NCBI RefSeq assembly: GCF_037042905.1
Contig: NC_087260.1
Coordinates: 21,700,001 to 21,764,000, forward strand
Length of the DNA: 64,000 bases
Direction: 5' to 3'
From: Lytechinus pictus
Taxonomy: Eukaryota
Shown: positions 168 to 60,844 of the stretch, piece after piece
Layout of the letters: every line of letters begins with the position of its first letter
Numbering within the stretch: position 1 is the first letter of the stretch
The notes under the pieces: generated by a model
What the model was told of the DNA's origin: nothing
The model's database searches: none
What the model saw: only the letters and a program-made list of their open reading frames with translations
Program-made: the position numbers and the translations under genes

Positions 168-247
168 AATATTGATATTGTTGATGATGGTGATTATGAC
201 GACAATGTTAAGGACAATGTTGGTCAGCTTTTCTTATTTGATCTTAC

Positions 248-625
248 CATCTCCATGTAATATACAAATTTCTGTGGGTTGTAATATTCCTTCGGTTGGA
301 AAGCCCCGACATAGTACTCGTAGCAATTAAGCCCTGCTACAAACAGTAGCACCAGCACATCACTGACTGCAAGATTCGCAAGGTACATGCTGGGAATCGT
401 CCACATTTCTTTAGTCGCAAGAATGATACCGATTACGAGAACGTTGGCGATGACCCCGAAGATAATGTTGAACAACGTGATGAAGAACATGATGAGGGAA
501 AGGAGAATGGTCAGTTCGCATTCGTCTTCAAGTAAAACGAAGGTGCATGAATGGTTGACTACAGTGTCTGTCGTGTAAGACTCGTTTAACCCGACAGTAG
601 TTGCCATCCTTGAAGTTGCATTCAT
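248..625 (-). CDS. Class A GPCR, kisspeptin-receptor-like, paralogue 1, first coding exon (N-term, TM1, TM2, start of TM3); gene continues left of the window
   Basis: ATG 625-623; motifs GVIANVLVI and YLANLAVSD; phase-0 donor ATG|gtaag at 248/247; acceptor cccacag| at 660/659; 378 coding bp, the same length as and highly similar to the exon at 17324-17701. Confidence 0.88.
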
Positions 626-1285
626 TGAAAATGTACGATGAGCCTACGTTTGTCCAATCCTGTGGGAAGATGAAATATTTAACTCATATCATAAAATAGC
701 GATGTCAGTAATCTTGAAATGATTGATGTTTCAATATCGTTTTAAAATTTAAAAGCTTAGTTGATTTAATTTCAAAACTATTTTGTTACTACGCCTTTAG
801 GTCCTTTTATTGAATTATATTATAGGTCCGATAGAAAAAGAACCAGTACTGAATTTGATATGCTTCATTGAAGTTCTGTACAGTCGTTATAAATATTTGT
901 AAAACATGAGACCACTAACATCCTGGCATATTAAATTGACAAATTCGACACATGAATTTTACCAAAGGTGATACGTAGACCTATGCAATTTTAGCATTCA
1001 TCAAAATAAAGTTTTTACCATCGTGTTAGATGATGTAACATACTTAGAAAAGCATTTGTTTCCTGCTCTTAAAGTGGCAAATGTAGACAGCGACTTTAAC
1101 ACAAAAGGATGTGGGTGCTGCAGTGGCACTGTAATCCGGAACCTTGGGGTTCAAAGTAGGCATTGATTGTACTCATGGTAACGGTGTTTTTTTTTCTCGT
1201 TACAATTATTTCCATTATCTTTAACAAAATTAGACCTGGGTCTCCACGAATATCATGAAATGAAATTAGATTAATAAAAACTCAC

Positions 1286-1810
1286 CTGAAAGTTCAGATC
1301 AGCCTGAATGCGTTTGTCTATACCCCGAAATCTACACAAAATTCTGTTTTAAACCATCAATATATCTCTGGTTCAGCAATGTTCTTCGCAGAATATGGAT
1401 AAACGGCACAGCAACACTATCCCGCTATCTAGAGAGTAACCTGGACATGATGGTTTATAATCGTCATTTTGCGAATCACTCCCAAATCCCAATCGCAGTC
1501 CATTAGCCATTAATATCTAGATCACATAATATTGGACGGGGGAATGAAAAATCTAAACAGACACTGATCTCGTTTTTTATTACAAAAACGTAATTACACT
1601 TCTCACTTGACAGCTTATTATGTGGTCTGATCGGTACCGTTGTATTGTGGTGACATTTCTGTAGATTCTCCTCGACTGAATATTAAGCGGTGGTTGTCAA
1701 ATGGAGCAAATTGTGAGGGGACTTTTTCTTTGACAATCCTAATATTGAAGTCCTATTGACAATTTTGATATGGAGGCCGCGGCTTTTGGTGAAGTAGATT
1801 TCAAATTATG
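1286..1810 (-). promoter_or_regulatory. Putative non-coding first exon and promoter of GPCR paralogue 1
   Basis: Donor TTCAG|gtgag at 1286/1285; TATAAA on minus strand at 1454-1459; blocks align with 27422-28115 upstream of paralogue 2. Confidence 0.6.
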
Positions 1811-2073
1811 CCTTATATGCTCATCGAAATGTATTGATTTTCATACGATCAGTGGCGTAACTACGGGGGGGGCATGGGGGCACGTCCCCCCCCCCCCCCC
1901 CCATCGGCTGACCAAAAAAAAAAAAACGGGGAAAAGGAGAAAAAGAGGGAGAAAGGAAGAGTTATATGTTATGTTATGTTATATTACATAGAAACATTTT
2001 TTTCGAAACTTCATGAAACATAATTTTCTCAGGGCCTATATCTTCACTGATCCTGGTGCTTGCATTGTCTGTT

Positions 2074-2358
2074 TAATGTATTTTAAAGACGACTCGGCGA
2101 TTTAAAATGATTTATAGGTCGGCGAACAAAGCCAGGTCATGAAGGTGTTTGTAATTTGGAATGGCGCGGTTGACGAGGTGATACGTCACAATGGTGCGCC
2201 AGACGGTATTGTTTATGAGCACAATGACAATAATTTATACTGGGCGCAAGGAGCGCCCATATTTTGGCGCGCGCGCCTAGGCGAAGGCGCGAAAAATCCT
2301 TCATTTTAGTCTTGGCTTTCAACGGAGATGAACGTCCAAAATATTCGCTTGTAATTTT
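2074..2358 (+). repeat. Split direct repeat A1
   Basis: Matches 9284-9568 at offset 7210; one mismatch seen (GGTGTTT vs GGTGTAT). Confidence 0.95.
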
Positions 2359-3194
2359 TCTACAAAGTACAACGAGATCTACAAGAATTTTTGTTGAAAC
2401 CATCTTCGATCGGGAATCATCTTAATTTTGCTTAATGCAGCTGTAAATGCTGTCCGAATTACTTGAGGATTCTCTATTTCTTGCCTGGCCTAACGATTAA
2501 CCGTCTGCTTTGAACCGAGTTTTATACGACGGTATACGAGGAGCTACGCCTACGCTACGACTACGTGTTGTCGCTATAACTAGTAGCAGATCGGCTGGGT
2601 CCTAGAACTTTTTGGTTTCCGCAACGATGAGAAATTGACTCGAGCTGCTAGATGGAATTCCGTTCAACGACATACGGTCGACTGGGATTCATCATGATTA
2701 TGAGTATTGAATGTTACGGTAGTCAGAGCCCGAGTCAGAGCCGGGTCCTAGGCCTACTACTACTACTAGCTCCCGAGACCGAGTATGATGTGAAGCCTGT
2801 GGCTGAGCCGAGGCAACGGTCTGGATTAGCAGACGGAACGGGGTCGGTACCAGACAATTTACAAGTTCCAGTCTCTGCAACTGAGTGCAAGACCTAGCCT
2901 ATCCGGTGAGTACGGAAGCAGGAATAGATCTAGGCTAGACTCAGTCTGGATTAGTGTAGTAGTAGGTGCTAGTACTACTAGTAGTAGGCCTACGCCTAAC
3001 TTAAGCCTATTGTTAGTTAGGCTTGTTGAATGATCGAGGCCTGCTACAGTCTTACACATACAGAGTAACAGAGTACAGTGATAGATACTGCTAGTACAAG
3101 TAGTAGGAGTATCGGGGTGATTTGTAACTTGTGGAGTTTTCTTTAGACTAGCGCAGGTAGGCCTGCCTACGGCTAGGCCCTAGTCTGACTCTGA

Positions 3195-3230
<36 letters not shown>

Positions 3231-6200
3231 GTCAGAAGTCGATTAGGCCTAGTTACGCTCTGAGTCTGACACAAATCTCTTTCAATTTCATGGCCCTTCG
3301 ATACCCCCCCCCCCCGGTTTTTTTTCGTTAGCACGCGAAGATCCCATTCCCATGTGCTAGGCAAATTAAATGCCTAGGCCCTAGTTAATGTAGTCAGGCA
3401 AACAGGGGGGGGGGTCTATTTGCCATTTGGCTTGCTAACGCTATTGGGGTCTGTACTGACTGTAGGTCAAATGTCAAGCCATAGATCCTAGACATAACTT
3501 GGACTTGGCCTGGAATTAATTTTAAACTTGGTCCAAGTGTTTTAATTACGATCATGATGGAAAAGGGAGGGGTTAGCTTCAAAATTTAAGCACAGGCCTA
3601 GCCTGGCCTAGACCTGGTCCTACTTGACTACTTGTTTTGGTGTCTGAACCAGGTCCAGGTGTGTCATGATGGAGATTGGAGGTTTTGAGAATGAGTTCAA
3701 CAATTTTAATTTAACGTTGGTTACCGTAGCGTATATTTATAGGCGTAGGCCCTAGTGCATCTGCATGACTAGATCTAGGGCCTAGGCCTATGGTTATACG
3801 GTTGTAATATACAATTTCGAAGCCGGTGGTTTGGATTTGGCCCAGTGAATGCCAACATTGCGGCTCTAAAATTTCGGCTAGTATCGATACTATGTATACG
3901 ATGGAAAATCAAAAGGAAATTGTAGTCTATATTGGCGCTAACACTAACAGCTTATTTTAAAAGGCCTAGTTATGGACTAGGTCTAGGCTAAGATCTATTT
4001 AGGACCATGATTAATTTTAAGCCACCGTTTTTGAAAAATGGTGAGAATAATAAAATAAATAGAGGGTCTACTAGTGATTGGCGAAAAGTTCAAACTTTTC
4101 GGTATTATTGATAAATAATTGAGTGGGAAATGTCACTTTGTTATAAATTTACAAGTAGTCTACTGCAGACACTGCAGCAGTGCATGGTGACACCACAGAG
4201 TGAAACTAGGCTCGGCCTAACGTTAGATCTACTTACATTAGACGCGGTTTTACATGTCTGTTTGGGGATAGACCCTATTATCAGATGGTTAAGTTAGGCC
4301 TATAATTTGACCTCTATGACGTTTTCTGGATTATGGGCCAGCGAGAGCTGTGTTCTTGGTCGCAAAATTATGTGGATAGACCGGTAGCGGTAATAATTAT
4401 AGATTCTACTCAGCTTTCAAATGTTATTGTTGAATCAGTCATTATTTTGGAAAGTAGCAGATGATGCTTATCATTATGATTATGTCATTAGCATTTTGTA
4501 ATAATACACTTTGATAAGCATTATAAATATAAATACCTCCACTTGCACCAAGCAGTTCTGTTTAAACATGTACGCCTTGAAAGGAGGTTGGTTTTGGGAA
4601 TTCACTTTGCATGAATTAAATGCCGATGCTTGGTAGAACTGTGAGCTCGAAGTTTCGAGGAAACATGGTACATGTAAAAGTAAACTTACCATGCACATGA
4701 TAATCGGATGTAATTTCGAATTAGCTTGGAATCCCCAATTTAGTTTAGATTGAAGTCAAGGGGTTCAACGAGCAGTTATTATAATAGTATGGGCCTCCTA
4801 ACAAGGAACCTTGATTTTTTATGATTTTGTATGGTTTATATCTTGTGGAAATGAAACTGAAAGAATGGAAATGCTTAGGCCCTATTGGAATTGAATTAAT
4901 TGTTTTTATATAGCGCTTTATCAACCTCTAACCGCTCAAAGCGCTTCAGAATTGAACCTTACACCTCATGGTTCAAGATATATATCAAATGAAATAGGCC
5001 TATTTGGCTGATCAATGATTTGAACTGAGATAATATCGATAGTATCATTTAAAATAATGATAATATATTATAGATTTGGTATACATGATCAAGGCGGCAA
5101 ATAAAATAATAAATAATGATGATGAGCTTATAATTATGAGCTAATTTCTTGAAGGCATTCAGTAGAAATTGATGTAGTCGATTGACATGGGCCTGTGTTG
5201 CATGGGCCTGTGTTGGAAAGTGTCTGAAATCTTGTACCATACTGTCATTTCCCCTTTGTTGCTTCGGGGGACACAATATACGGATGCCTTAATAATGCAA
5301 TAAGCCATATAGGTATACTGGCCAATCAAACGAAATTTACCGATTGCTCAATCAGAAACCAGGTTCCAAAAAGTATATCTTCTTCTTGGAATTGGACAGC
5401 GTGTGAAATATTCGTGCTGGTGGCCCGTTGATTATGAAAATGTATCTAATGGGCTGGATGCAGTAATTTGGCTTGATTATTTCTGCAGTGGTGTAGAGGT
5501 AAAACCGAATACTGAAATAAGAATAATAAATAATAAAAATGATAAGAGAAGTTATAGTCTAAAATGGAACAGATTATTTGAAGCTTATTGAATCTGGTTT
5601 TGAAATATTGTCGAAGTTGCAACACGCACATATATGCAGATGATATTGCATCGCTGGTTGGGGTTATACTGTAAGGAATTTGAAAATAGCAGTTATAAAT
5701 GAAACATAAGGAGCAGGACTAATGATTACTCTGTGAAGGCGGTTTCAGATGTTTCGGGAAGCTGCTCGTTTCGTATAAAGCTAAAAATTTAAGTACGCGT
5801 ATATTGGAAGCTATGATAAAGAGGGCGAAGGATATACATGTATATATTTTATTTGTTATTTCTGAATAAATGGTACAACTCCATAGGCATTTAGGGGGTT
5901 CAATTGAGCCCCCCCCCCCCCAATACTGGTGAGGATTGTAATCTTCCAAATTGTTTAATATGCTTTTCACTAGTGCTTGTGTGTTTGCAGTAGATGAAGA
6001 AATGTTCATAACCTCTGTTATATACGTCCTTCGGTTTTCGGGCCTACAAGAGTGATAAATCGAAAAGGATAGCAGAGGGACAGACCCGTTTTGGTACTAG
6101 ATATAGAATTTGGTGTTCTGCCCAGGCTTTTTTCTTCTTTTCTTTTGCAGTGCCGGATCTTGGATGAAAGGGATTCAAGTGGGCTACTGCGAGGCAAGGT

Positions 6201-7011
6201 AGGCTGGCAGGAAAGTCTGATGACAATTAGACGGTAGACCTACTATTTCCTGACCAGTTAGCTTAGAGTCCATAGTAAAGGATGTCATTTTGGGGCGTTA
6301 ATACGCTCTTATAATAAATAGAACTGAACTGGGTATTGTTGCCAGCAATGACTCTAATTGGAGCAGTGGTCAACGTCTTCATCTTCATAGAACTAATTTA
6401 CCGACAAGGTGGTTTTGATACGTATTCCAAGGAATAGAGGTTTTTCTTCAGTCAAAAAACTGGTGAACAAACATTTTAGCCTTCAAGCAACAGGGAAAGA
6501 TCATATTTGAAACATCATGATACAGTGGGCTGTCTTGAAGGATAAGTTCATATAATATGAGGATGAATTCGTCATGATTTCAGTTTCAGACTTTTTATGA
6601 GGTCCCCCATATTGTTCACTTGGATGGGATTGGAACTTGAACATGTTGAACATATGAAGAAAGCCCTTTGTACGTATGCTTTTGCCAACAAGAATGGAAC
6701 ATATTGTTCAGGATAAGCATATATGAATGTATCAATGTATAAGCCACTTCAAATTTTATTCATTATCGTTTGAAGGACTACTTGTTCGGATGTTATTTAA
6801 TTTTTGAAATAAATAATTATTTCATGGATGTGGTGAGGATGATAAAACAATAAAAAGGCAGTCATGCTTTACGTTGATATGTGAAAACATTATCGAAATG
6901 ATTCATCCCGGGTAAAGTTCCAGTTTATGTTAACTGGTTCTTAGTTTAACAGCATATTTAATTGAGGAGTGTTGCTCTAACCGAGTAGTCCTGATCGGGA
7001 AGGTTTCATAT

Positions 7012-7843
7012 TCAAATTAGTTTTAGTGCCTTCAATTATCATGATTATACTCCATGTGTTATATGGGGTTATTCTGTGGATGTTACGCAAGCTTTCAGTT
7101 TTTATTTTATCTCATTTCAACAGAACAATTTACAAAATCCATTATAACTCAGGAATGGTATAATTATGTATTTGTTGGAATTAAGTGTGAGGTGACTAAC
7201 TAAATGCTGTGGTTGGATTTTAATTGATCGATTGTCTACAATTGAATTATATTTGTGCATAGGGTTAAATCATGCACTGTTATAAATGGCAAATGGGGCA
7301 ACAAGAAAATGGCAGTACCTCAGTGCGGCATGCATTGCCGGTTTAGCAATGTTGGGATGCTTCTATGTGTTAACTATATGGTCAAACTGATGGCGTTCGG
7401 CCATCAAATTAGTTTTAGTGCCTTCAGTTATCATGGTTATACCCCATTATCCAATGGGTTTTTTTTTGTGGATGTTACTCAAGTTTTCAGTTTCAGATTT
7501 TATTTTATCTCATTTCTAACAGAACAGTATACAAAATCCATTAAAATACAATTATAACTCAGGAATGGTATGATATGTATTTGTTGGAATTAAGTGTGAG
7601 GTGACTACGATAGCTAAATGCTACCTAAATGCTAAATGCTAAATGTTGGATTTTATTGATCGATTGTCCACAATTGAATGATTTGTGTGCATAGGGTTAA
7701 ATCATGCACTGTTATAAATGTATGGTAAATTGGGCAACAAGAAAGAGGCAGTACCTCAGTGCGGCATGCATTGCTAGTTTAGCAATGTTGGGATGCTAGT
7801 ATTTGTTAATTATATTAAGGTCAAACCGATAGCGTTCAGCCAC
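7012..7843. repeat. Diverged ~400-bp tandem duplication inside the SDR element
   Basis: 7012-7403 and 7404-7843 both start TCAAATTAGTTTTAGTGCCTTCA and are collinear with small indels. Confidence 0.9.
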
Positions 7844-8547
7844 CATTGATAACTTATCAAAATTAGTGATGCAATGAATTTCAATTTTGAAGCTTGCAAT
7901 ATGTTTGTATCAAAACCATGATACTTAAAATTGCATATTATCTTGTCTTCCTTCATATGTTTTGTTTAGTTTTGTGCATGGTAATCAGATCTTAATTGTG
8001 AAGGAAGTTCTGACACGGTTTATGTTTAATGTATTTCTATTGGGAGATTGTTTCCAACAATTGAATACATAGAAGTGTTTTCCATGCTCTCATTAAACTT
8101 GAGATGGATATTTGTTCATATACTTGTATTGAATAATTCTATCTGGTTTTTAAATGTCATTTCATGCTGGTTTAAAAGGGGGCTGGTATGTTGGTCAAGG
8201 ATAGAAAGCAGGTATTCTGGAAAAAAAAAAAAAAATAATAATAATATCTAGAGGCAAAGAATGCAAGCCTTCAGGTAATTGTGTCATGAAAGACAGCGAC
8301 GTCAAAGGTTGTACAAAGATGTATATTTTTGATTCATTTAAATTTATTGATGGAGGGCTTGGAGGCCTTCTTGATTATGCATGATAACTGATTTAGCTTG
8401 GCCAGCTAACACAAAACTGGAGTAAATTATGAACGAAGGCTTAAAAATGAATGAAGTGTTTTGGCGGCCGATCATATATATAAAATATATTCTCGTTTGG
8501 CGGTAATTTGTCAAATTATGCCGCCTAAACACTGTTGTCATAAGATA

Positions 8548-9288
8548 TATTGGCATGGAATATGTTCTTTAATCCACAATGGTCACTTTTGCAAGGTGTG
8601 TAAAGCAGTGAATGATATTTTAGCCTCTAGTTATTAGATTTTCCACTTTGATGCCATGTACGTTGATTAATATTTCATATTGAATCGGGTCCTCATTCGG
8701 TACCTAGACGAAGGGGATTTATTTATAACTTTACATAGTACTTTAGGAACGCAATTGTAATTTGAATGTAAGGGTGTCACGCTCGAACTTTCAGTTTAGG
8801 CCTCACCTGATCTCATAGGCGGGGAGGCTGGTATTCTGTATACATTTATATTTTTCGTGAAATTTTGGCCTCACCCAAGTTCTCATGCGGGAAGGCTGGT
8901 ATATATATGTATATTATATGATATAAGTATGCCATCTGTAATCCACCGATTTGCCGATAGCTCATACATGTAGTTAATAGCTGTGCTGGTATTCCTGTCC
9001 GGCTAGCAGAGAACCAGTGGGAAAGCAGCCGTGAAATTTAACGTTGAATTTTCTGGGAGGGGGGCCTTCTAGCCGGGGGTTTAACCCCCCTTCGGGGAGC
9101 TAAACAAAGGCTATCGGTTGGTTCCAGACATACATGAATGTAAGTCTATAATCAGAGGTATTCATATCCATGTTTTATACTTATGTGATTGTGACACCAG
9201 ATTCGGAAAAGTGTTCATCTCTATTGAATAAAGCCACGACATAATCGCATATTATTTTGTTTTGTCATTTTGTTTGCCGAGTATAATG
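8548..9288 (+). repeat. Split direct repeat B1
   Basis: Matches 10024-10764 at offset 1476, near identical; AATAAA at 9227-9232. Confidence 0.95.
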
Positions 9289-9568
9289 TATTTTAAAGAC
9301 GACTCGGCGATTTAAAATGATTTATAGGTCGGCGAACAAAGCCAGGTCATGAAGGTGTATGTAATTTGGAATGGCGCGGTTGACGAGGTGATACGTCACA
9401 ATGGTGCGCCAGACGGTATTGTTTATGAGCACAATGACAATAATTTATACTGGGCGCAAGGAGCGCCCATATTTTGGCGCGCGCGCCTAGGCGAAGGCGC
9501 GAAAAATCCTTCATTTTAGTCTTGGCTTTCAACGGAGATGAACGTCCAAAATATTCGCTTGTAATTTT
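9284..9568 (+). repeat. Split direct repeat A2
   Basis: Copy of 2074-2358; overlaps the end of B1 by TAATG. Confidence 0.95.
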
Positions 9569-10023
9569 CCCACCTCCTCCCCAACAACCATCCATGTCAA
9601 TGTTACGTTTGGGTCAAACAATGTTGGAATGTTTTAACACATGCAATGGGGAAGGTCGAGAATAAAGATACTCTAGGTATCATTCAGAGTTGATTTGTGT
9701 TTTATTGGAGTGTATAGCTCGTTATGAATGGAATAACGGATGTAGAATTGTTATATAATAATTTGGACATTTGAATTATTTTACTTACATGAATTTAATG
9801 TTGATTTATATAACGAAACACGAATTCAAATCCGGGGGCAGTTTGCCTGGTCGCACATCAAAACAATATAAAGATCGTCGTGTATTTAGAAATGTGGGCC
9901 GTAAGGGAATTTTATCCTTCTGATCTATTTTGGTCTGTGGTCAGGTGGGTTTTCGCCCTTACCCGTTTTTGGGACTGGGTGTTCGTTATATTTTGGTAAT
10001 TCACTTGAATAGAGTTCTCATAT

Positions 10024-10764
10024 TATTGGCATGGCATATGTTCTTTAATCCACAATGGTCACTTTTGCAAGGTGTGTAAAGCAGTGAATGATATTTTAGC
10101 CTCTAGTTATTAGATTTTCCACTTTGATGCCATGTACGTTGATTAATATTTCATATTGAATCGGGTCCTCATTCGGTACCTAGACGAAGGGGATTTATTT
10201 ATAACTTTACATAGTACTTTAGGAACGCAATTGTAATTTGAATGTAAGGGTGTCACGCTCGAACTTTCAGTTTAGGCCTCACCTGATCTCATAGGCGGGG
10301 AGGCTGGTATTCTGTATACATTTATATTTTTCGTGAAATTTTGGCCTCACCCAAGTTCTCATGCGGGAAGGCTGGTATATATATGTATATTATATGATAT
10401 AAGTATGCCATCTGTAATCCACCGATTTGCCGATAGCTCATACATGTAGTTAATAGCTGTGCTGGTATTCCTGTCCGGCTAGCAGAGAACCAGTGGGAAA
10501 GCAGCCGTGAAATTTAACGTTGAATTTTCTGGGAGAGGGGCCTTCTAGCCGGGGGTTTAACCCCCCTTCGGGGAGCTAAACAAAGGCTATCGGTTGGTTC
10601 CAGACATACATGAATGTAAGTCTATAATCAGAGGTATTCATATCCATGTTTTATACTTATGTGATTGTGACACCAGATTCGGAAAAGTGTTCATCTCTAT
10701 TGAATAAAGCCACGACATAATCGCATATTATTTTGTTTTGTCATTTTGTTTGCCGAGTATAATG
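10024..10764 (+). repeat. Split direct repeat B2
   Basis: Copy of 8548-9288, ending GCCGAGTATAATG. Confidence 0.95.
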
Positions 10765-12101
10765 AGATATAATCCCGTTGTACTAAAACCTCCCGTTTTC
10801 AAGTCAATATACACCAAACTCGCACTTCGAGTTATTATTGTTTTATGTAGTGACATATGCTTCTTTTTCATGACTACTTGAAGTGATTGCCCCATGTTAA
10901 GATCTTAATATAAAACATTTCCTGTCCGTGATTACGTCTGCATTAGTGGATTGGTGAGATATGTCTGCTCTCCATGAATACGGATCAGTCCTTAAAATGT
11001 CCCCTTTTCTGATCTGAATATCAAAAAATGTTAGCTCGCGCTCGCATCACTTGGTTAGTGAAATACGTATGGTCTTTGAGAATTCCTACAAACAAGCCTT
11101 AAAATGCCCCTCTTCATGTCTGAATTATCTAAATTTTTAGTTCGCGCTCGCAATATTTGATTAGTGATATGCGAATGATATTCATGATTACAATGACTAC
11201 AAGAGCTTCATGTATTTAGATGTAATTCTAACAAAATCAGCAAGCGCTTGGCACTCACATTAGATGACTATGGTGTGAAATGTAGACCCTTAATGGATTC
11301 CTAAAATATAGTCCTTAAAATCTCCCTGTTTGGGGTCAATATATACAAAAATTTAAGCTCGCGCTCCGCGCTCGCATTGTTTAGCGAGATATGTACGTAT
11401 CATGATTACAAAAATTTGATTATAATGTCCCTTTTTAGGTCTGAATATCAAACAATTTTCAGCTCGCGCTTCGCGCTCGTATTATTTGATCAGTGAGATA
11501 CATATCAGTTTAATAGCGTTGTCCTTAAAATGTCTCTATTAGGTCAGTACACCTGGCAACTGAGCGCGCTTCGCGCGCTCACGAAGTGACTCAAAATGTT
11601 TGCTGGTGCCCCCCCCCCCCAATGCCGCGACCCACGGTACGCCACTGCATACGATGTTGATTGTCTCGAGTGGCTTTTCTGCTATTAATCTTTTATAATT
11701 CCATGTGCCGTTCTCAGGGGAGGTTTCAGGGCAAAGAGGGGCTTACAAAAATCTTTGAATTCTCTGAATCAAAAAGGTCTTTAAAAAGGAAATAATAACA
11801 CTCCAGATTTATTTTGATGTTCAGCCGGTCAACAGAACCCCTTTTATTAGACTCATAATTATTATGGAATTCGTCATGGTGCAGAAGTAAACAACACAAG
11901 AAGTTACCTTTTGGCATCTGCAATTATTATAGGTTGAAAAATCTTGATAGGATATGTGCTAGCTCAAGTCAATCTGTTAAGTGTGACGTGCTGTTGTAAG
12001 GGTCCAGACGCTGTAAATGAACCTATTCATGTCTCTGTTTCCTTTCTACCTAGTCATTTCTATATAATATTGCCAATCTATTAAAAAAAGAAACACAACT
12101 A

Positions 12102-14351: not shown

Positions 14352-15019
14352 TTACAATCTAGTGGAGATTTCTGCCCTGGTGACGTCATAAGCAAGATTA
14401 TAGACCCCTTGCGACTTCCATTCTTCTGTTAAAATGACGTCAGAAACTGTAGATGGGCTTCCTGCACCGTTTGCATGGTTTGTTTTCCTGGTTTGAACTT
14501 GGTGAATTTCCATAGATTTCTTCCACTTGCTGCGGGAAGGTGCACAGGAAAGAACACGCCAGATAGATTGATAAAACTTCTCGTGCGAGAGAGCGTACAG
14601 GAACGGATTGATGAGACTGTTTAGATGATACAGGCCTTGTGCGACGTGGAACTCGATGATGACGACGGATGGCTCCACGAGACGAGACCCTCCGAAAGCG
14701 ATCCACAACAAGGAAGCGATGTAGAATCCCTGGATGATCGCGAACAGGGAAACAACAAACACGGATGCGCGTAGCACGGCGTGCTTTTGTCTAGAGCGTA
14801 TCTTGCGCGTCGCGTCAGATACGCGTTCGTTTGCAACCCTTTCTTTCCAAATTGTGTACATTATTCCCGTGTAGCAACCAAAGATGATGAGTAGGGGGAT
14901 GACGTACATGAATATAGAGCCAAATGGGATCAAATATCTTGTTCTTGGTTCCATCCACGCTTCAAGCATGTTACCTCCAAATGGAACACCAAAGTATAAC
15001 CCTCCAAAGAAGAACGAAA
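14352..15019 (-). CDS. Kisspeptin-receptor-like GPCR paralogue 2, last coding exon (end of TM4 to C-terminus)
   Basis: Acceptor tttccttacatgtttgcag| at 15020/15019, phase 1; YVIPLLII (TM5); LNSLINPFLY (NPxxY); stop TAA 14354-14352. Spliced CDS 378+136+668 = 1182 nt = 393 aa. Confidence 0.9.
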
Positions 15020-15739
15020 CTGCAAACATGTAAGGAAAAAGAAACACATAACTTCAGTTGAGATAATTGGCCCGAATTCACAAAGGTGTTTTCGAAACCA
15101 TCGGTTGAACCCATGGTTTATGCAGATTTTCTTATCAATTACGCTTACATACCTCGTATAATAAAAAGAAAAATGTCCACTGCTGATGCGTGCTTTTGTC
15201 ACAGTGCGCCAAATTGACTTTAAAATCTGCATAATTATTGTTAGGAGCTTGATAATCTATTATCATTATTTTTATTGTTGTTGTTATTATTATTATAATT
15301 GTATCCTAGTTATTATCATCATCAATCATTACAATCATAGCTTTTATAATGATCAGTATTTATAAAATGCTAATGTCTATTCTTAGCGCTTTTCCAAATA
15401 AGAGAGGTATGCTATTCAATCTAATGAAGATATGAACATACACATATAGATTGGTAGTCCAACAATAAAGCGAATTCTAAAAGCACATTCTGCTGCCTTA
15501 GTTGAGTACGCCATTTTATCCATGAGTCCACTGTTTTGAAAAGTGGATTCATTAATAAAGATAGCATGCTTAACCATAGCAACAGGCGTTAATTTGGCGT
15601 ACTGTGAGTAAGCGCGGATCAGTATCGTCATATTTTTTAGATGTAATTTTAGGCCGATAGATCTTTCGTAAAGTAACGTCGACCTAATGATCTGTCCGCC
15701 AACTCTTCTGTGGCATTCGTAAATTCCCTCATTAGATCT

Positions 15740-15869
15740 GGGTCCCGTAACACAAAGGTAAGTGATTGATCGTCGCTTGATTTTCACGATTGATTGTACA
15801 TTGTAGTCAATGCAATCAATCGTAGAAATATGCTCTACGATCATTGCTAAGTTTTGTGTTACGGGCCCC
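15740..15869. mobile_element. Short PIF/Harbinger-type MITE in GPCR intron
   Basis: GGGTCCCGTAACACAAA ... TTTGTGTTACGGGCCCC inverted ends with CTG/CAG flanks. Confidence 0.7.
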
Positions 15870-16751
15870 AGAATTCGACAAGTTATCACAAAAAAGGATC
15901 AGAGTATAGGGAAACGACAAAATAATCTGTATAGAAGAGCAATTCATACAAAATCATGAAAGGTCTTCAAGAAGCTCCCAAATTATGACGAGGAATGGCG
16001 TAGAGAGCGCTTTCTCTTCTCAAAACATCAGTGACGTTGAATTTGCAACGAACACCGACTATATAACACGTTAATCTAATTCTATGTATATAGCTTAAGT
16101 AATTCCATGTTACAGGAAATATGGTGGGCACTACCAACATACACACATCTCACACATCGTCATACACACACTCACCATTATTCACACACTCCCTATCCTT
16201 TATAGTCCCACCCACCCACACGTTTCCAATCCACAATTTCACACACACACACACTCACCTATACCATACACACACATCTCTCTCACACACTCACACGCAC
16301 GATCTACATTTATCCGGGAGGGGGGCACTTGCATTGATGAAGAAAAGCATAAAAGGGATCTCTTTTTCGAGATTGGGCACGTTACCTACGTAACGTAATT
16401 AATAAGAGTGTCAAAAACACTAAAATACTGAAAAGGGTATGTATTTCGCTAGGAACATGAGGAAAGCTACGTGTTTACGGTCAAATTTGAATGTGCGAGG
16501 GTATAAAAAGAGTCCGATTTGAGCGAGGTGTGGGAGGTGGGGCGGTACTAAGTGATGGTAAAGCCGACGTCCGTGACATAAAAATGACATTGAAATATCG
16601 CTGTACTTGTTTAGGGAGTCAATACAGGGAATATTCGGGTTTGTTTCCGATACTTGTTAAGGGTAGGGTTTCACACGCCAATATAAATTAATTGTAATCA
16701 TTGGAAATGTAAATCAACGAAACGAAATTGATATGAAATGAAATATCTTAC

Positions 16752-16887
16752 AAATCCAGACAACAACGCAAACTACGATAGCAGTTTTCTTGGTCCGAAA
16801 CTTCTTTGATCGTAAAGGATAGACAATAGCAAAGAATCTGTCAATGGTAAGTGCGATCATCATCACAACGGTTGCAGCGGCAGTCAC
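16752..16887 (-). CDS. Kisspeptin-receptor-like GPCR paralogue 2, middle exon (TM3-TM4); absent from the ORF track
   Basis: ttttttaaag|VTAAATVVMMIALTIDRFFAIVYPLRSKKFRTKKTAIVVCVVVWI+T|gtaag; 136 bp, phase 0 to 1; DRF motif. Confidence 0.92.
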
Positions 16888-17035
16888 CTTTAAAAAATGA
16901 ATAAGTTAATAGAATTAGAATATTCAATTCAATTTTCAACGAATTGAAATGTATTCAAATATTTTACGATGTCAAGTTGTTATATTGACTAATAGAAAAT
17001 GGTAATCCATTTTTTATGTTCTTCACATTAATAAT

Positions 17036-17217
17036 NNNNNNNNNNNNNNNNNNNNNNNNNNNNNNNNNNNNNNNNNNNNNNNNNNNNNNNNNNNNNNNNN
17101 NNNNNNNNNNNNNNNNNNNNNNNNNNNNNNNNNNNNNNNNNNNNNNNNNNNNNNNNNNNNNNNNNNNNNNNNNNNNNNNNNNNNNNNNNNNNNNNNNNNN
17201 NNNNNNNNNNNNNNNNN
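17036..17217. other. Assembly gap (182 N) inside GPCR intron
   Basis: N run. Confidence 1.
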
Positions 17218-17323
17218 CAAAAACTAAATAACAAAATCATCAAAGGTATACAGTTGTAGCAGTGATGATGACATTTTTCATATTCGTCAATAAAGGTTGA
17301 AATCATTTATTTTCGAATCTTAC

Positions 17324-17701
17324 CAATTCCATGTAATATACGAAAGCTTGCGGGATGTGGTATTCCGTTGGTTGGAAAGCCCCGATATAATACTCGTAGC
17401 AATTAAGCCCTGCTACAAACAGTAGCACCATCAGATCGGTGACTGCAAGATTCGCAAGGTACATGCTCGGAATCGTCCACATTTCTTTAGTCGCAAGAAT
17501 GATACCGATTACGAGGACGTTGGCGATGACCCCGAAAATGATGTTGAACAACGTGACGAAAAACATGATGGTGGAAAGAAGAATGGTCAGGTCGCATTCG
17601 TCTTCAAGGAAAACGAAAGTGCAGGAATGGTTGGCTACGGTGTCTGTCGTGTAAGACTCGTTCAATCCGATAGTAGTTGCCATTCTTGAAGTTGCATTCA
17701 T
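17324..17701 (-). CDS. Kisspeptin-receptor-like GPCR paralogue 2, first coding exon
   Basis: Acceptor gtctacag| at 17737/17736; ATG 17701-17699 (MNATSRM...); YLANLAVTD; donor TTG|gtaag at 17324/17323. Confidence 0.9.
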
Positions 17702-17888
17702 TGTCAATGTGCAATGGAGCCTACGTTTGTCCAAACCTGTAGACATAATTTATCAAGCGAGGAATAATAAAAAAAATATGATTGTGGTATCGATATCAAC
17801 ATAATTAGGATAGATGTTTGAAGATTAGATGCGAATGCTTGGATTTATATTTCTATATTCTAATATTCTAACCATGCTATGTATTATT

Positions 17889-18717
17889 AACAAGTGGAAC
17901 GCCTCTGGCAGTCTCGCCTGCATTACGCAATTCGATATAGCAGCAGTGCTGCTGCTTTGAAAACAGCTAATGAATAATTATTCACAAAAGAAAGCACTAA
18001 TATGACTTTGACCATGATCTTAAGACCTAAGACATGTGCAAAACAATCATTCATACTTGATTACCCTTATGTCGATGTTTCATGAGCTAGAGCTAGATCA
18101 ATAAACTTTCCAAGTTATGATGACAATTCCACAAATACCATCAACATTACCAAAGTTTGTTGACCCGAAATGACGTTTGACCTTGGTCATGTGACCTGAA
18201 ACTCGCAAAGGATGTTTAAAGATACTTGATCGCTCTTCTATCCAGGTTTCATGAACAAGATCCATAGAATTTCAAAGTTATAATGACAATTCCTCAAATA
18301 CCCCCAACATGGCCAAAGTTCGTTGACCCTAAGTGACATTTGATCTTGGTCATGTGACCTGAAATTCGCACATAATATTTAGGGATACATGGTTAGTCTT
18401 ATGCCCAAGTTTCATGAACTAGATCCATAAACTTTTAAAGTTATGATGACAATTCCTCAAATTACCCCAGCATTGCCAAAGTTTATTGACCCTAAATGAC
18501 CTGTGACCTTAATCATATGACTTGAAACTCAGGCAGGATATTTAGTGATACACTATTACCCTTATGTCCAAGTTTCATGAACTAGGTCTATATACTAGTT
18601 CTTTCTAAGTTAGGATGACAAAAACTTAACCTTGTTTAAGATTTCAATGTTGACGACGCCGGCGTCGCCGTCGGAAAAGCGGCGCCTATAGTCTCTGCTA
18701 TGCAGGCGAGACTATAA
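17889..18717 (-). mobile_element. Helentron-associated non-autonomous element (HINE/DINE-1-like) with internal ~140-bp tandem repeats
   Basis: Subterminal inverted repeats GTCTCGCCTGCA / TGCAGGCGAGAC; reverse-orientation relative of 24849-25839; TGACCTTTGACC-type repeat units. Confidence 0.7.
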
Positions 18718-18917
18718 AAACAAGAAGGTACTGGATTATCGCAGTACAGACCCTAAAGATTATAGGTCAATCGCAAAAGTGGCAAAAATAAAATTTAACA
18801 AGCAAGAGAAAAGGTTTCGTCACTGCCAAAAGGTACCTATTTGCAGTTTCAAAAATAACATAGCAAAAATAAAAAGACAAAAGCAAATACTACAAGTATT
18901 TCCATGGATATCTTCAT

Positions 18918-21850
18918 GGTATATTCTCGGTGCCGGGTAAAAATGGCAGAGGTAATAATGGAAAAGGTAAAAATGGCAGAGGTAATAATGACAGAGGTAA
19001 AAATGGCAGAGGTAAAAATGGCAGAGGTAAAAATGGCAGAGGTAAAAATGGCAGAGGTAAAAATGGCAGAGGTAATAATGGCAGAGGTAAAAATGGCAGA
19101 GGTAAAAATGGCAGAGGTAATAATGGCAGAGGTAAAAATGGCAGAGGTAAAGATCATGACATGCTAGATCAGCAAGGAAAAGATAGAGTCTTTCCAGTTA
19201 ATATCAGTCATAATTATTGACCTTGAATAGACTCCTATCGACAAAATGAGTATTATAAACTGATGAGATAGTATTTGGATTTTTTTATCATTTTATGTCT
19301 ATACTTTATTGTTGATATGATTAAACTCAAACATTTTCATGCCAAAATGATTTCAATTAGTGAGTGATGAAAGGATTTAACTTGGCCAGTTCGTATAGTA
19401 GAACAGCACTTCATCACATACATACCAAACGAATTGTAATGTAAACACCAATGTGCGCTACCATTAAAACACTGAAATAGACGAGTTCGGGATTTCTTTG
19501 AACCACTTGCATAACATGGATAACAGAAAAATAACAAAACGTTCTGTAATACAAGTAATTGTTCATATTTCAACATCATAATGGATCCAAATAGTGTAGT
19601 TGCAGACTTGTTTGAGAGTTCAAATAAAACAAAGACCTCGACGGGAATTTAAAGTTTCATGTCATTTCTTTATTATTCATTCTTTGACTTTTCAATTCCT
19701 TGAATACTTGACACATTCCATGAAACCCTTCCATTCCTTTAATCCCATGAGAACAAGTAAATTCCGTGAAAACTGTGGGTTGAAACAGAGTACAAGAAAG
19801 TAACAAGTACAAGAGCAACATAAATCCTTTACATCATCTATGACTTTAACCAGTGTGATACAATAACTATCTGACTCTGAATGTAAATAATCACAATCCA
19901 GCTCAAATACGACCTATTTAGCAATAAAAGGATATTTGTAACCAAAATGCATACAGCTTAATAACCTTGACAAATGATATTCAATCTAAGTTACATAATT
20001 AAGTGGCATTCATGTATTTAACACCAACACACAAGATGCTTATAAGATGCATGTCTTATCATCATTTAAAATTACTCTATAGCATTATCGGGTGTTTGCC
20101 TTTCAAGTGATATGCATAAATTGACACACATGCTTTCTGTGTAAACTGGTTATGTACTTTCACATACATTAATGCATTAAGCTTTCTTGTGCCATGTCGA
20201 TATGCAAATCAAATTAAATCAGTCTTTCTTGCAATATACATTCATAATTCTTAAATACATATAAATCAATGTTTTAACTAACATCTTTGCCTCCAAAAAT
20301 CTTCTTATAAAAAGCAATCCCGTTTAGGATGCTTCAGATTGATGTAGATTTTACTCCAAAACAAAATCGCCAGCACTGATTCCATTTTATCACCTCTATC
20401 ACCTCAGTTGACCAAGAGATGGCGCTAACAATAGAAACCTCAGGCAAGGCATACACATCACATGCACTGTGTGCACTATGTACAATATATACAAAGGTGT
20501 GTGTGTGCTCACCCAAGCACATTACATATAGAACAAGCATCAAATACCATTAGTCTGATCCTCAGACCCAAGGAGATTCAATTTAAACTGTTGATGGTTT
20601 TTCAGAACAAAACATATTAACAAAGTTTGTACTCAAAACAGCTTTCATAATATTGACATGATACGTATATAGTTTAATATAAATGATATAATAATAGCAA
20701 CTAGTGTTCATTTTTTCAGAGTAATACCTTATTGCAGCTAGTCCTAGTGGATATCAGGTTCATTAGCTAGTTTCTATAGTAACGGTTACCGCATGAATTT
20801 TGAAATGTGTAGTGTATCAGGGATTTAAATGTATAGGTGTTTCTTAGGTACCATTCTATCGACCTGTTTTGAAGGGGAATTCACCCTGACAAATGGTTTA
20901 CTGTGAAAATTGCAGAAAAAAAAATATTGGTGAAGGTTTGCGGAAAACCCATCAAAGATTAAGACAGTTATTAGAAGTTTGAGTTTTTGATCTGTGACGT
21001 CTTATACTAGTAACTACCCCGTATTTTATGCACCAAAATGTCTACTTTTCAATTTTTTTAATCAGTGGTTCATGATTGCTAATAAAAAATCTTTCAGGAG
21101 CGGATGTGAAATCATTTGTATGTTAATATACTTTTCATTTTTTTTTTGAAAATTACATTTCATTGATATTTTTTATTACACCATATATGGTGAAAACTGC
21201 TCGCAAATGACGTCCCCATTAACGTAAAATTTTAGTAGCTTTTTAAATCTTTGATGGATTCCCTAAAACCCTCACCAATATCATTTTAATAAACTTTATG
21301 TCAGTGTGAATTTCCCCTTTAATGAATTAAGTACAATATTTGGGATTCAAAGTGTTCTTCAAATTTGAATATTAGAAGAGCGATTTGACATGAGAAGGTC
21401 GTGCATGTAAGTCCAGGAAAAAAATAAGAAATACCAACTCAAGTGTTATCATTTTTACCTCAGTCATTTTTACCTCTGCCAGTATTACCTCTGCCATTAT
21501 TACCGCTGCTGTCTATTCCTCTGCCATTTTACCTTTGCCATTTTTACCTCTGCCATTTTTTACCTCTGCCATTTTTACCTTTGACATTTCTACCTCTGCC
21601 ATTTTTACCTCTGCCATTTTTACCTCTGCCGTTTTTACCTTTGCCATTTTTACCTCTGCCATTTTTACCTTTATTTTTACCTCTGCCATTTTTACCTTTG
21701 CCATTTCTACCTCTGCCATTTTTACCTCTGCCATTTTTACCTCTGCCGTTTTTACCTTTGCCATTTTTACCTCTGCCATTTTTACCTTTATTTTTACCTC
21801 TGCCATTTTTACCTCTGCCATTTCTACCTCTGCCATTTTTACACCGAGCC
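18918..21850. mobile_element. Foldback-type DNA element with arms of 15-bp tandem repeats (AAAATGGCAGAGGTA)n; Mutator-like TSD
   Basis: Left array ~18937-19150 and inverted right array ~21450-21841; ends GG..CTCGGTG / CACCGAGCC; flanking ATATCTTCAT (18908-18917) and ATATTTTCAT (21851-21860). Confidence 0.75.
20873..21318. mobile_element. Kolobok-type MITE nested in the foldback element
   Basis: AGGGGAATTCACCCTGACA ... TGTCAGTGTGAATTTCCCCT|TTAA; same family as 36249-36693. Confidence 0.75.
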
Positions 21851-22119
21851 ATATTTTCATGCTCTTTTAATTACACTGCCGCATGAAGAGACACTAATCA
21901 CCCTAGGGTCATATGTATAGCTTTGGACTTGTGCCCCAGCCTCCCCCATCCTCCTCCAATCCCCGTACCGACGCCTTACTAAATATATACATTTGTATCT
22001 GTTTACTGATTCTGTTTTTTTGCTTTTTCATCTTTCTCTCTCCGAAACCAGGATGTAAGGACTTACGGCTGAAATATAAAGAAACTTGAGTATAATGTGT
22101 CTGGGTGTCAAATTGTTGA

Positions 22120-56286: not shown

Positions 56287-56344
<58 letters not shown>

Positions 56345-60774: not shown

Positions 60775-60844
60775 GTAAGAGCTTTAACAAAAAATAAAAT
60801 CATGCAAGAAATATTTGTTTCAATCCATCATTCGTAAAAGGTTA

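What the first reader, a model, noticed from the sequence alone, without database searches (positions are those of the whole stretch)
2074..10764. 8.7-kb non-coding retroelement with Ngaro/PAT-type split direct repeats: candidate non-autonomous tyrosine-recombinase retrotransposon
Seen: order A1(285 bp) - 6.2 kb internal - B1(741 bp) - A2 - 455-bp spacer - B2, each repeat pair differing at only one or two positions that I could see. It sits in the middle of a hAT MITE that rejoins on removal (GTT-TAATG-AGAT). The longest internal ORF is about 100 aa, with no RT, RNaseH, YR or Gag motifs. Known: A1..B1-A2-B2 is the diagnostic structure of Ngaro and PAT elements of the DIRS order, which integrate as circles via a tyrosine recombinase. 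Inference: a recently mobile, large non-autonomous parasite of such an element (a DIRS analogue of LARDs) carrying kilobases of non-coding cargo. I do not know of a description of such a family.
Basis: partly seen in the sequence, partly recalled or inferred. Interest (0 to 1): 0.85.

Follow-up and report, generated by a model that had tools for sequence, protein, structure and literature searches.

The report
Non-coding split-repeat retroelement in sea urchin
An 8.7-kb mobile element without genes, built A–interior–B·A–spacer–B like the tyrosine-recombinase retrotransposons already known from sea urchins, sits inside an older small transposon; it is a clean, young example of a kind first described in 1988 (TOC1 of Chlamydomonas), not a new class.

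Summary
A1 2074-2358 matches A2 9284-9568 with 1 mismatch in 285 bp. B1 8548-9288 matches B2 10024-10764 with 2 mismatches in 741 bp. The interior is 6,189 bp and the spacer 455 bp. B and A overlap by TAATG, and the same pentamer bounds both outer ends. The host is a hAT-like MITE with a CAGTGGCGTA terminal inverted repeat and a perfect 8-bp target duplication, CATACGAT.

The element has no coding capacity. There is no RT, RNase H, recombinase or Gag signal, and the longest stop-free stretch is what shuffled sequence gives.

The best reading is a non-autonomous split-direct-repeat retroelement of the DIRS order (Ngaro/PAT type). It would have integrated as a circle by a tyrosine recombinase supplied in trans, crossing over at TAATG. 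Three features fit one plus-strand transcription unit: uniform G>C strand bias, a CpG-rich A, and an AATAAA plus GT-rich poly(A) site about 40-55 nt before the end of B.

Not shown: other copies, an autonomous partner, or RNA or circle intermediates. The genome (cited as Lytechinus pictus, GCA_037042905.1) could not be searched here. A tandem pair of Crypton-like DNA elements is not excluded.

The novelty claim fails. TOC1 (partner TOC3) and SIRE (VIPER) are described non-autonomous relatives. This is a new member of a known kind, of modest interest.

The parts
1842..1849 (.). left copy of the 8-bp target-site duplication (CATACGAT) of the host MITE
   Evidence: identical to 11648-11655
1850..2073 (+). 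left part of the host hAT-like MITE, starting with the terminal inverted repeat CAGTGGCGTA followed by G/C runs
   Evidence: 10/10 match to the reverse complement of 11638-11647, with partial similarity to about 31 nt
2074..2078 (+). TAATG, left copy of the 5-bp crossover/overlap motif (attL-like core)
   Evidence: the same pentamer is at 9284-9288 and 10760-10764
2074..2358 (+). repeat A1 (285 bp including TAATG); CpG-rich (observed/expected 1.71); inferred promoter and 5' end of the transcript
   Evidence: 284/285 identical to A2. CpG and strand skew
2359..8547 (+). non-coding interior (6,189 bp). It contains a CTAG/TAGGCCTA palindrome-rich zone at about 2500-4400, an A28 run at 3200-3227, and an old ~400-bp tandem duplication
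   Evidence: no coding capacity; composition and palindromes
7012..7845 (+). internal tandem duplication (7012-7406 / 7404-7845, 80% identical), far older than the insertion
8548..9288 (+). repeat B1 (741 bp including the terminal TAATG). It carries a ~36-bp motif twice at 68-bp spacing (8799, 8867) and an AATAAA at 9227
   Evidence: 739/741 identical to B2.
9265..9340 (+). B|A junction region with nested dyad symmetry around TAATG (9284-9288). Arms: GCCGAGT 9276-9282 / ACTCGGC 9302-9308; TTTGTTTGCCGA 9269-9280 / TCGGCGAACAAA 9329-9340; TCATTTT 9265-9271 / AAAATGA 9314-9320. Inferred template of the circle junction and recombination site
   Evidence: inverted repeats; single-stranded DNA fold -11.3 kcal/mol, z = -3.85, 0 of 200 shuffles as stable
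9284..9568 (+). repeat A2
9569..10023 (+). unique 455-bp spacer between A2 and B2, unrelated to the interior
10024..10764 (+). repeat B2, ending in TAATG (10760-10764, attR-like core)
10703..10759 (+). plus-strand poly(A) site in B2: AATAAA at 10703-10708, CA dinucleotides 12-20 nt downstream, then a GT/T-rich tract (TATTATTTTGTTTTGTCATTTTGTTTG). The same site is in B1 from 9227. Transcripts would end about 40 nt before the end of B
   Evidence: positions; sequence read directly. A has no AATAAA on the minus strand (read)
10765..11647 (+). right part of the host MITE, with ~106-bp sub-repeats at 10987-11500 and the right terminal inverted repeat
   Evidence: (family D3)
11648..11655 (.). right copy of the MITE 8-bp target-site duplication (CATACGAT)

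Best explanation
This is a non-autonomous, gene-less retroelement of the DIRS order with split direct repeats (Ngaro/PAT type). It is an animal counterpart of Chlamydomonas TOC1.

Inferred life cycle:
1. Transcription starts in the CpG-rich A1 on the plus strand, reads through B1-A2 and the spacer, and is polyadenylated about 40 nt before the end of B2.
2. A reverse transcriptase supplied in trans by an autonomous Ngaro or PAT element copies this RNA.
3. The internal B1|A2 junction is the only place in the RNA that holds the untranscribed start of A and end of B. It serves as the template to rebuild both ends and close the cDNA into a double-stranded circle with a B-TAATG-A junction.
4. The partner's tyrosine recombinase crosses that junction over with a TAATG in the genome, here inside a hAT-like MITE. 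TAATG is left at both ends and no true target-site duplication is made.

Shown: the architecture, the 5-bp overlap at all three junctions, the absence of coding capacity, the clean insertion into an intact MITE, the youth of the repeats, the uniform strand bias, the poly(A) site, and the dyad symmetry at the junction.

Inferred: the RNA intermediate, the trans-acting partner, the circle, and the recombinase.
For: 1. The exact A1-int-B1A2-sp-B2 layout is the published diagnostic of Ngaro, PAT and VIPER elements.
2. B and A overlap by TAATG, and the same pentamer is at both outer ends. The chance that an internal junction matches a 5-bp flank repeat is about 1 in 1,024. The DIRS integration model predicts such a motif shared by circle junction and target, with no target duplication.
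3. The host is an echinoid. Ngaro and an 'echinoderm-form' Pat1 were described from the sea urchin S. purpuratus.
4. There is no coding capacity at all, yet the repeat pairs are 99.7% identical. The element was therefore non-coding when it inserted.
5. GC skew is +0.12 to +0.19 in A, interior, B and spacer alike. Every other 8.7-kb window downstream of the element gives -0.21 to +0.03. This indicates that all four parts share one strand-asymmetric history.
6. A has CpG observed/expected 1.71. B ends with AATAAA plus a GT-rich downstream element on the plus strand only.
7. Dyad symmetry is significant at the B|A junction.
8. Non-autonomous precedents exist: TOC1/TOC3 and SIRE/VIPER.
Against: - Only one copy was seen. 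There is none elsewhere in the 64-kb window.
- No match was found through predicted proteins or exact 24-28-mers in viral and metagenome contigs. These collections would hardly contain sea-urchin repeats, so this is weak evidence.
- No RT/YR partner was found. The only RTs in the window belong to LINEs, and there is no recombinase domain.
- B1 carries the same poly(A) site as B2, so the model needs read-through of B1.
- The dyad arms are spaced 19 nt apart with TAATG off-centre. That is not the classic 6-8-bp spacer of tyrosine-recombinase sites quoted.
- Near-identity of the repeats could be maintained by gene conversion rather than reflect youth.
Confidence: 0.62

Rival explanations
1. Two separate non-autonomous tyrosine-recombinase DNA elements (Crypton-like) share the same ends. 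One is A-interior-B (about 7.2 kb) and one is A-spacer-B (about 1.5 kb). They integrated one after the other as DNA circles at the same TAATG core, giving a head-to-tail tandem that mimics split direct repeats. No RNA step is involved.
For: Cryptons have 4-6-bp direct repeats at both termini that are thought to be the recombination substrate, with 5-bp cores such as TATGG. Non-autonomous Cryptons are known, and a Crypton-1_SP exists in sea urchin (PMC3212892). The TAATG at all three junctions fits this model equally well. Interior and spacer are unrelated, as expected for two different deletion derivatives or cargoes.
Against: It needs a rare double hit at one site, whereas every copy of a split-direct-repeat retroelement has this layout by construction. 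Animal Cryptons were reported to have no terminal repeats at all. The uniform strand bias of all four parts and the plus-strand poly(A) site at the end of B are not expected of a cut-and-paste DNA element. No recombinase gene is in the window.
Confidence: 0.12
2. Assembly artefact or local rearrangement. The interleaved repeats come from mis-joined reads or haplotypes, or from a tandem duplication by unequal exchange at a 5-bp target duplication followed by replacement of the second interior.
For: Only one assembly was seen, and no read-level data can be examined here. An assembly gap lies about 6 kb away at 17036-17217.
Against: The repeat copies differ at 3 positions, so they are not one sequence used twice. 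All breakpoints fall exactly on TAATG. The flanks are not duplicated, and the MITE halves with their inverted repeats and 8-bp duplication are intact. The spacer shares nothing with the interior. A duplication model would therefore need complete replacement of 6.2 kb within the time that produced 0.3% divergence.
Confidence: 0.06
3. An ordinary LTR-type relic (LARD/TRIM-like, with B+A as a 1,021-bp LTR) or a partial tandem of a Penelope-like element with pseudo-LTRs.
For: There is a 5-bp direct repeat at both ends, as LTR integrases make. Direct repeats bracket a non-coding interior. MRC1 of Chlamydomonas shows that such non-coding elements get misclassified.
Against: An LTR model needs two truncations at exactly the same base, with the flank pentamer inside the 'LTR'. 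There are no TG...CA ends. There is no tRNA-complementary primer site after A and no purine tract before B (read directly). Rfam found no hammerhead ribozyme or any other family at E<=0.1. There is no poly(A) or simple-repeat tail at the 3' end.
Confidence: 0.05
4. A decayed autonomous Ngaro/PAT copy whose genes eroded in place.
For: The size (8.7 kb) is in the range of autonomous elements.
Against: No trace of RT, RNase H, recombinase or Gag was found at E<=1. Stop-free lengths equal those of shuffled sequence. The flanking repeats have diverged by only 0.3%, so in-place decay cannot have erased 5-6 kb of genes.
Confidence: 0.03

Closest known systems
TOC1 of Chlamydomonas reinhardtii (non-autonomous PAT-group DIRS element; partner TOC3)
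   Same: [quoted passage not shown] 1988). It is classed as a non-autonomous DIRS retrotransposon mobilised by a recombinase-encoding partner. From my memory, not checked here: its layout is also A-interior-B·A-short spacer-B, with repeats of about 217 and 237 bp and a spacer of about 123 bp.
   Different: The host is a green alga, not an animal. TOC1 is active in laboratory strains and its partner is known. Here no partner, copy number or activity is known. The repeats here are larger (285 and 741 bp) and the spacer is longer (455 bp).
Ngaro and echinoderm-form Pat1-like elements (e.g. of Strongylocentrotus purpuratus)
   Same: They have split direct repeats A1...B1A2B2, with the internal repeats near the 3' end, and a sea-urchin host.
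   Different: Those elements encode Gag, RT/RNase H and a tyrosine recombinase (plus a methyltransferase in PAT). This element encodes nothing. Sequence relatedness of its A/B repeats to any of them could not be tested.
SIRE / VIPER of Trypanosoma cruzi
   Same: SIRE is a non-autonomous derivative of a split-direct-repeat recombinase retroelement, and it corresponds to the A2-B2 region of VIPER. The A2-spacer-B2 block here (1,481 bp) is the equivalent module.
   Different: SIRE is short (about 0.43 kb) and highly repeated. This element keeps the full four-repeat layout and a 6.2-kb interior.
DIRS1-like elements (circular-junction model)
   Same: A short motif is shared by the overlap of the internal repeats, both element ends and the target, and integration occurs without target duplication.
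   Different: DIRS1-like elements have inverted terminal repeats plus internal complementary regions and a 3-bp junction. Here the repeats are direct and the overlap is 5 bp.
LARDs (large non-coding derivatives of LTR retrotransposons)
   Same: Both are large non-coding interiors carried between the terminal repeats of a retroelement and mobilised in trans (established knowledge).
   Different: LARDs have complete LTRs at both ends and use a DDE integrase with true target duplications. That is not the case here.
Non-autonomous Cryptons
   Same: [quoted passage not shown]
   Different: Cryptons are DNA-only and lack long terminal or split repeats. They would explain this locus only as a tandem pair.

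Membership tests
Split-direct-repeat YR retrotransposons (Ngaro / PAT / VIPER; DIRS order) | Split direct repeats A1 ... B1A2 ... B2, with A1 matching A2 and B1 matching B2 | tested here: met
   284/285 and 739/741 identical. The order is exact and B1 abuts A2. Definition.
Split-direct-repeat YR retrotransposons (Ngaro / PAT / VIPER; DIRS order) | Encodes reverse transcriptase / RNase H | tested here: not met
   no RVT or RNase H hit at E<=1 in 62 six-frame pieces; stop-free lengths are as in shuffled sequence. It is therefore not an autonomous member, only a candidate non-autonomous derivative.
Split-direct-repeat YR retrotransposons (Ngaro / PAT / VIPER; DIRS order) | Encodes a tyrosine recombinase | tested here: not met
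   no Phage_integrase-type hit in the element; none anywhere in the window.
Split-direct-repeat YR retrotransposons (Ngaro / PAT / VIPER; DIRS order) | Integration without target duplication, through a short motif shared by the circle junction and the target | tested here: met
   TAATG is at the left end, at the B1|A2 overlap and at the right end. With one copy this cannot be told from a 5-bp duplication plus coincidence (p about 0.001).
Non-autonomous derivative of such an element (TOC1-like) | Termini shared with an autonomous RT/YR element in the same genome | not testable with these tools
   The host genome (GCA_037042905.1) cannot be searched by DNA here, and no DIRS-order protein was available as a seed.
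Non-autonomous derivative of such an element (TOC1-like) | Dispersed copies with the same ends (a family, i.e. evidence of mobility) | tested here: inconclusive
   No second copy in the window. No hits in protein, viral or metagenome collections, but these are unsuited to sea-urchin repeats.
Non-autonomous derivative of such an element (TOC1-like) | No coding capacity at the time of insertion | tested here: met
   together with 0.3% divergence of the repeats.
PAT versus Ngaro assignment | Methyltransferase domain present (PAT/DIRS) or absent (Ngaro); phylogeny of RT and YR | not testable with these tools
   The element has no proteins, so the assignment depends on the unidentified partner.
Crypton (non-autonomous) | 4-6-bp direct repeats at both termini, with no long terminal repeats | tested here: inconclusive
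   The TAATG repeats are met. The locus fits only if it is read as two tandem units. Animal Cryptons are reported without terminal repeats.
LTR retrotransposon derivative (LARD/TRIM) | Complete identical LTRs at both ends with TG...CA, a tRNA primer-binding site, a polypurine tract, and a 4-6-bp target duplication | tested here: not met
   the ends are A only and B only. There is no TG...CA, no primer-binding site after A, and no purine tract before B.
Penelope-like element with pseudo-LTRs | Hammerhead ribozyme motif in the repeats; partial tandem with a 5'-truncated upstream copy | tested here: not met
   no Rfam family at E<=0.1 in 1500-11500.
hAT-type MITE (the host element) | Short terminal inverted repeats, 8-bp target-site duplication, no transposase | tested here: met
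   CAGTGGCGTA inverted repeats and the CATACGAT duplication. The MITE is 1,112 bp without the insert. Superfamily assignment rests on the 8-bp duplication and the CAG-type end only.

The most novel reading that the evidence does not exclude
The A...B units are independently mobile circles. The 7.2-kb A-interior-B and the 1.5-kb A-spacer-B each integrated by a tyrosine recombinase at the same TAATG core. This locus would then be a split-direct-repeat architecture caught at its birth by tandem integration, a living intermediate between Crypton-type DNA elements and Ngaro/PAT-type retroelements.

A milder novel reading is that a large, recently active family of gene-less split-repeat elements with a defined 5-bp crossover core exists in echinoderms, which to my knowledge has not been described for animals.
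Probability: 0.1. Interest if true: 0.65.

Novelty: new member of a known kind. Interest (0 to 1): 0.3.

Why it matters
Tyrosine-recombinase retrotransposons are the least understood order of retroelements. Their circle intermediate and the specificity of their recombinase have barely been tested experimentally (PMC7192593).

This locus offers three things:
- A very young, gene-less copy whose three junctions all read TAATG.
- An insertion site that can be reconstructed exactly, because the host MITE is intact.
- A concrete donor site (B-TAATG-A, with nearby dyad symmetry) and target site, so recombinase specificity could be tested in a laboratory sea urchin.

It also shows that the TOC1 type of parasitism, in which a non-coding element rides on a split-repeat retroelement, probably occurs in animals. 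As classification it is ordinary. It should be annotated as a DIRS-order non-autonomous element, not as a new class.

Tried and rejected
1. Looked for other copies through predicted proteins. The A-repeat ORF was searched against 5.8 billion proteins, and nine element ORFs were looked up exactly. Nothing was found. The collection calls only a few gene-like ORFs on this genome, so this route is blind to the element.

2. Ran exact-pattern scans with a 24-mer of A in viral contigs and metagenome contigs, and with the 28-mer B|A junction in metagenome contigs. There were no matches. These collections are not expected to hold sea-urchin repeats.

3. Looked for an autonomous partner in the window. 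Pfam on 93 further six-frame pieces and the long ORFs found only LINE APE/RT, a GDSL esterase and GPCRs, and no recombinase.

4. Could not obtain a DIRS/Ngaro protein seed by reference from any tool. No homology search for the partner in this genome could therefore be launched, and I did not type sequences from memory.

5. Tested whether the spacer is a deletion remnant of the interior, as a tandem-dimer model requires. There is no similarity.

6. Tested whether the A28 run at 3200-3227 marks a nested retroposed insert. No flanking direct repeat was found.

7. Looked for a paralogous empty site. The left flank 1205-1834 resembles 27344-28147 at 65-68%, but the similarity stops before the MITE, so it says nothing about the TAATG target.

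8. Rfam and tRNA scans were negative.

9. Day et al. 1988 (PMC454463) and Goodwin & Poulter 2004 are not held. The details of the TOC1 layout are therefore from memory.

Full report
**1. Observation**

The repeat structure is exactly as described.
- Ungapped extension and blastn of the element against the window give A1 2074-2358 = A2 9284-9568 (285 bp, one mismatch at 2149/9359).
- B1 8548-9288 = B2 10024-10764 (741 bp, mismatches at 8559/10035 and 9060/10536).
- The interior (2359-8547) is 6,189 bp and the spacer (9569-10023) is 455 bp. The spacer has no detectable similarity to the interior.
- Reading the junctions shows that B and A overlap by five bases. The three junctions read CTGTT-TAATG-TATTTT at the left end, GAGTA-TAATG-TATTTT at B1|A2, and GAGTA-TAATG-AGATAT at the right end.

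**2. The host site**

- CAGTGGCGTA at 1850-1859 is matched by its reverse complement at 11638-11647.
- G/C-run-rich subterminal similarity extends to about 31 nt.
- Both ends are flanked by a perfect 8-bp duplication, CATACGAT, at 1842-1849 and 11648-11655.
- Without the insert the MITE is 1,112 bp.
- No second copy of the MITE lies in the window. The continuity GTT-TAATG-AGAT therefore could not be checked against a sister copy, but the intact ends show that the MITE predates the insertion.

**3. No genes**

- The longest start-to-stop ORF is 100 aa.
- The longest stop-free stretch is 125 aa. Block-shuffled versions of the element give 116 +/- 22, and 25% of shuffles reach 125.
- All 62 six-frame pieces of at least 45 aa were scanned against Pfam at E<=1. 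None hit a reverse transcriptase, RNase H, integrase/recombinase, Gag or zinc-knuckle family.
- Rfam (E<=0.1) and tRNA scans were empty.
- The A and B pairs differ at only 3 of 1,026 positions, so in-place decay cannot have removed 5-6 kb of genes. The element was non-coding when it arrived. Gene conversion between the repeats could make it look younger than it is, but it would not change this argument much.

**4. Further anatomy found here**

(a) Strand bias. A, interior, B and spacer all have G>C on the plus strand, with skew +0.12 to +0.19 (+0.155 overall). Every other 8.7-kb window downstream of the element lies between -0.21 and +0.03. The four parts therefore share one strand-asymmetric history, as expected of a unit that is transcribed and copied as a whole.

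(b) Ends of the transcription unit. A is CpG-rich (observed/expected 1.71, against 0.75 for the rest of the window). The last 60 nt of B hold a well-formed animal poly(A) site on the plus strand: AATAAA at 10703 (9227 in B1), CA dinucleotides 12-20 nt downstream, then a GT/T-rich tract. The minus strand of A has no such signal. The plus strand is thus the likely sense strand, with a start in A and an end about 40 nt before the end of B.

(c) The B|A junction is embedded in nested dyad symmetry. The arms are GCCGAGT/ACTCGGC, TTTGTTTGCCGA/TCGGCGAACAAA and TCATTTT/AAAATGA. As single-stranded DNA the junction folds at -11.3 kcal/mol (z = -3.85), and none of 200 shuffles folds as well. This may be a recombinase-binding arrangement or a structure in the cDNA. 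The spacing (19 nt, TAATG off-centre) is not that of classic recombinase sites, so I treat it as suggestive only.

(d) The interior carries three notable features: an old tandem duplication (7012-7406/7404-7845, 80% identical), an A28 run at 3200-3227 without flanking repeats, and a zone at about 2.5-4.4 kb strongly enriched in CTAG and TAGGCCTA palindromes.

**5. Where it comes from**

- An intronless rhodopsin-type receptor in the window has its best named relatives in sea urchins (Diadema 74%).
- The identical protein lies on chromosome CM073241.1 of assembly GCA_037042905.1. PMC11082199 cites that assembly as Lytechinus pictus.
- Sea urchins are known hosts of this order. Ngaro elements and an 'echinoderm-form' Pat1 were described from S. 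purpuratus (PMC4157794).

**6. Mechanism**

The literature gives A1-[ORFs]-B1A2B2 as the hallmark of Ngaro, PAT and VIPER elements. For DIRS1-like elements the accepted model has three steps. The internal repeats overlap on a 3-bp 'circular junction'. The rebuilt circle then recombines with an identical trinucleotide in the genome. The element therefore begins and ends with that motif and no target duplication arises (PMC3266345; PMC7192593).

The present element shows the same logic with a 5-bp motif. The chance that an internal junction reproduces a 5-bp flanking repeat is about 1 in 1,024.

My best explanation (confidence 0.62) is a non-autonomous split-direct-repeat retroelement:
- It is transcribed from A1 to the poly(A) site of B2.
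- It is reverse-transcribed by a partner's enzyme.
- It is completed and circularised using the B1|A2 junction as the template for the untranscribed ends.
- It is integrated by the partner's tyrosine recombinase at TAATG.

A circle of this kind contains two identical B|A junctions. The model therefore predicts that sister copies may occur in either permutation (A-int-BA-sp-B or A-sp-BA-int-B). It also predicts that recombination between the repeats leaves A-sp-B, A-int-B or solo BA remnants. 'Isolated AB repeats' of this sort are reported for Cafeteria Ngaros.

The RNA step, the partner, the circle and the recombinase are all inferred. A weakness is that B1 has the same poly(A) site as B2 and must be read through.

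**7. Rivals**

- *Tandem pair of Crypton-like DNA elements (0.12).* Two elements sharing A and B ends, integrated successively at one TAATG, would look the same. Cryptons have 4-6-bp terminal direct repeats as recombination substrates, have non-autonomous derivatives, and occur in sea urchin. This reading needs a rare double hit and does not explain the strand bias or the poly(A) site. Only other copies can decide.
- *Assembly artefact or local rearrangement (0.06).* This is unlikely because the copies differ at three positions, all breakpoints fall on TAATG, the flanks are not duplicated, and the spacer is unrelated to the interior.
- *LTR-type or Penelope-type relic (0.05).* This fails on the ends (no TG...CA, no primer-binding site, no purine tract) and on the absence of hammerhead motifs.
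- *Decayed autonomous copy (0.03).* This fails on section 3.

**8. Comparison with what is known, and novelty**

[quoted passage not shown] - From memory, not verifiable here because the paper is not held, TOC1 has the same A-interior-BA-short spacer-B layout and no long ORF.
- SIRE of T. cruzi is a non-autonomous derivative of VIPER and corresponds to its A2-B2 region.

This locus is therefore a new member of a known kind. It may be the first clearly documented gene-less split-repeat element in an echinoderm, but I could not check Repbase.

**9. Limits**

- The host genome could not be searched at the DNA level.
- The protein-index routes are blind to this element.
- The exact-pattern scans of viral and metagenome contigs were negative, as expected.
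- Copy number, the partner element, polymorphism and expression remain open. The decisive tests are listed separately.

**10. Verdict**

The architecture, non-coding nature and insertion context are right. The non-autonomous recombinase-retroelement reading is the best explanation but is unproven in its trans-acting parts. The claim of an undescribed kind is wrong. Interest is 0.3.

Noticed in passing
window 18095-25759: Nested inverted arrays form a foldback-like structure of about 7.7 kb. 163-bp units at 18095-18596 face their reverse complement at 24974-25759 (about 80% identical). 15-bp units (GGTAAAAATGGCAGA) at 18936-19151 face their reverse complement at 21450-21842 (93-95%). Translated, the 15-bp array gives a spurious Pentapeptide Pfam hit.
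   Followed up: partly
window 10987-11500 (inside the host MITE): The right half of the hAT-like MITE consists of four or five degenerate sub-repeats spaced about 106-110 bp (63-78% identical), each ending in GCTCGCGCTCGC.
   Followed up: partly
window 2500-4400 (interior of the element): This zone is strongly enriched in CTAG and TAGGCCTA palindromes. The element has 1.5 TAGGCC per kb against 0.24 per kb elsewhere, with 24 of its 26 TAGGCC/GGCCTA sites between 2001 and 5000. It has many short hairpin-forming inverted repeats, including a C12...G10 hairpin at 3301-3419. Origin and meaning are unknown.
   Followed up: partly
window 1205-1834 vs 27344-28147: The left flank is 64-68% similar to a second region of the window. 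The similarity ends 16 bp before the MITE's terminal inverted repeat. It is probably an old duplication within the receptor gene cluster that predates the MITE.
   Followed up: partly
window 227-643(-), 14352-15047(-), 17306-17749(-), 40538-41785(+): A cluster of intronless rhodopsin-family receptor genes or fragments. One copy (14352-17749, minus strand) is split by the assembly gap at 17036-17217. The complete one (383 aa) is 74% identical to a Diadema 'nociceptin receptor-like' protein.
   Followed up: partly
window 47696-56343: LINE debris. An APE+RT ORF at 52823-55462 continues in another frame to 56288 and is followed by a poly(A) run (matches span 56287-56343). An RT fragment lies on the minus strand at 51652-52209. 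A GDSL-esterase ORF lies at 47696-48151(-). An unannotated 175-aa ORF at 48239-48766 is called as a gene in the public record.
   Followed up: partly
window 37238-38495: A C/T-rich minisatellite with periods 34, 50, 84 and 113 bp. It is open in all three plus-strand frames and has no Pfam match.
   Followed up: no
window 60565-60834(+): An exon-like piece with a strong XPG N-terminal nuclease domain hit (E = 5e-17), presumably part of a FEN1/XPG/EXO1-family gene at the right end of the window. A weak PARG helical-domain hit elsewhere in the window was not located.
   Followed up: partly
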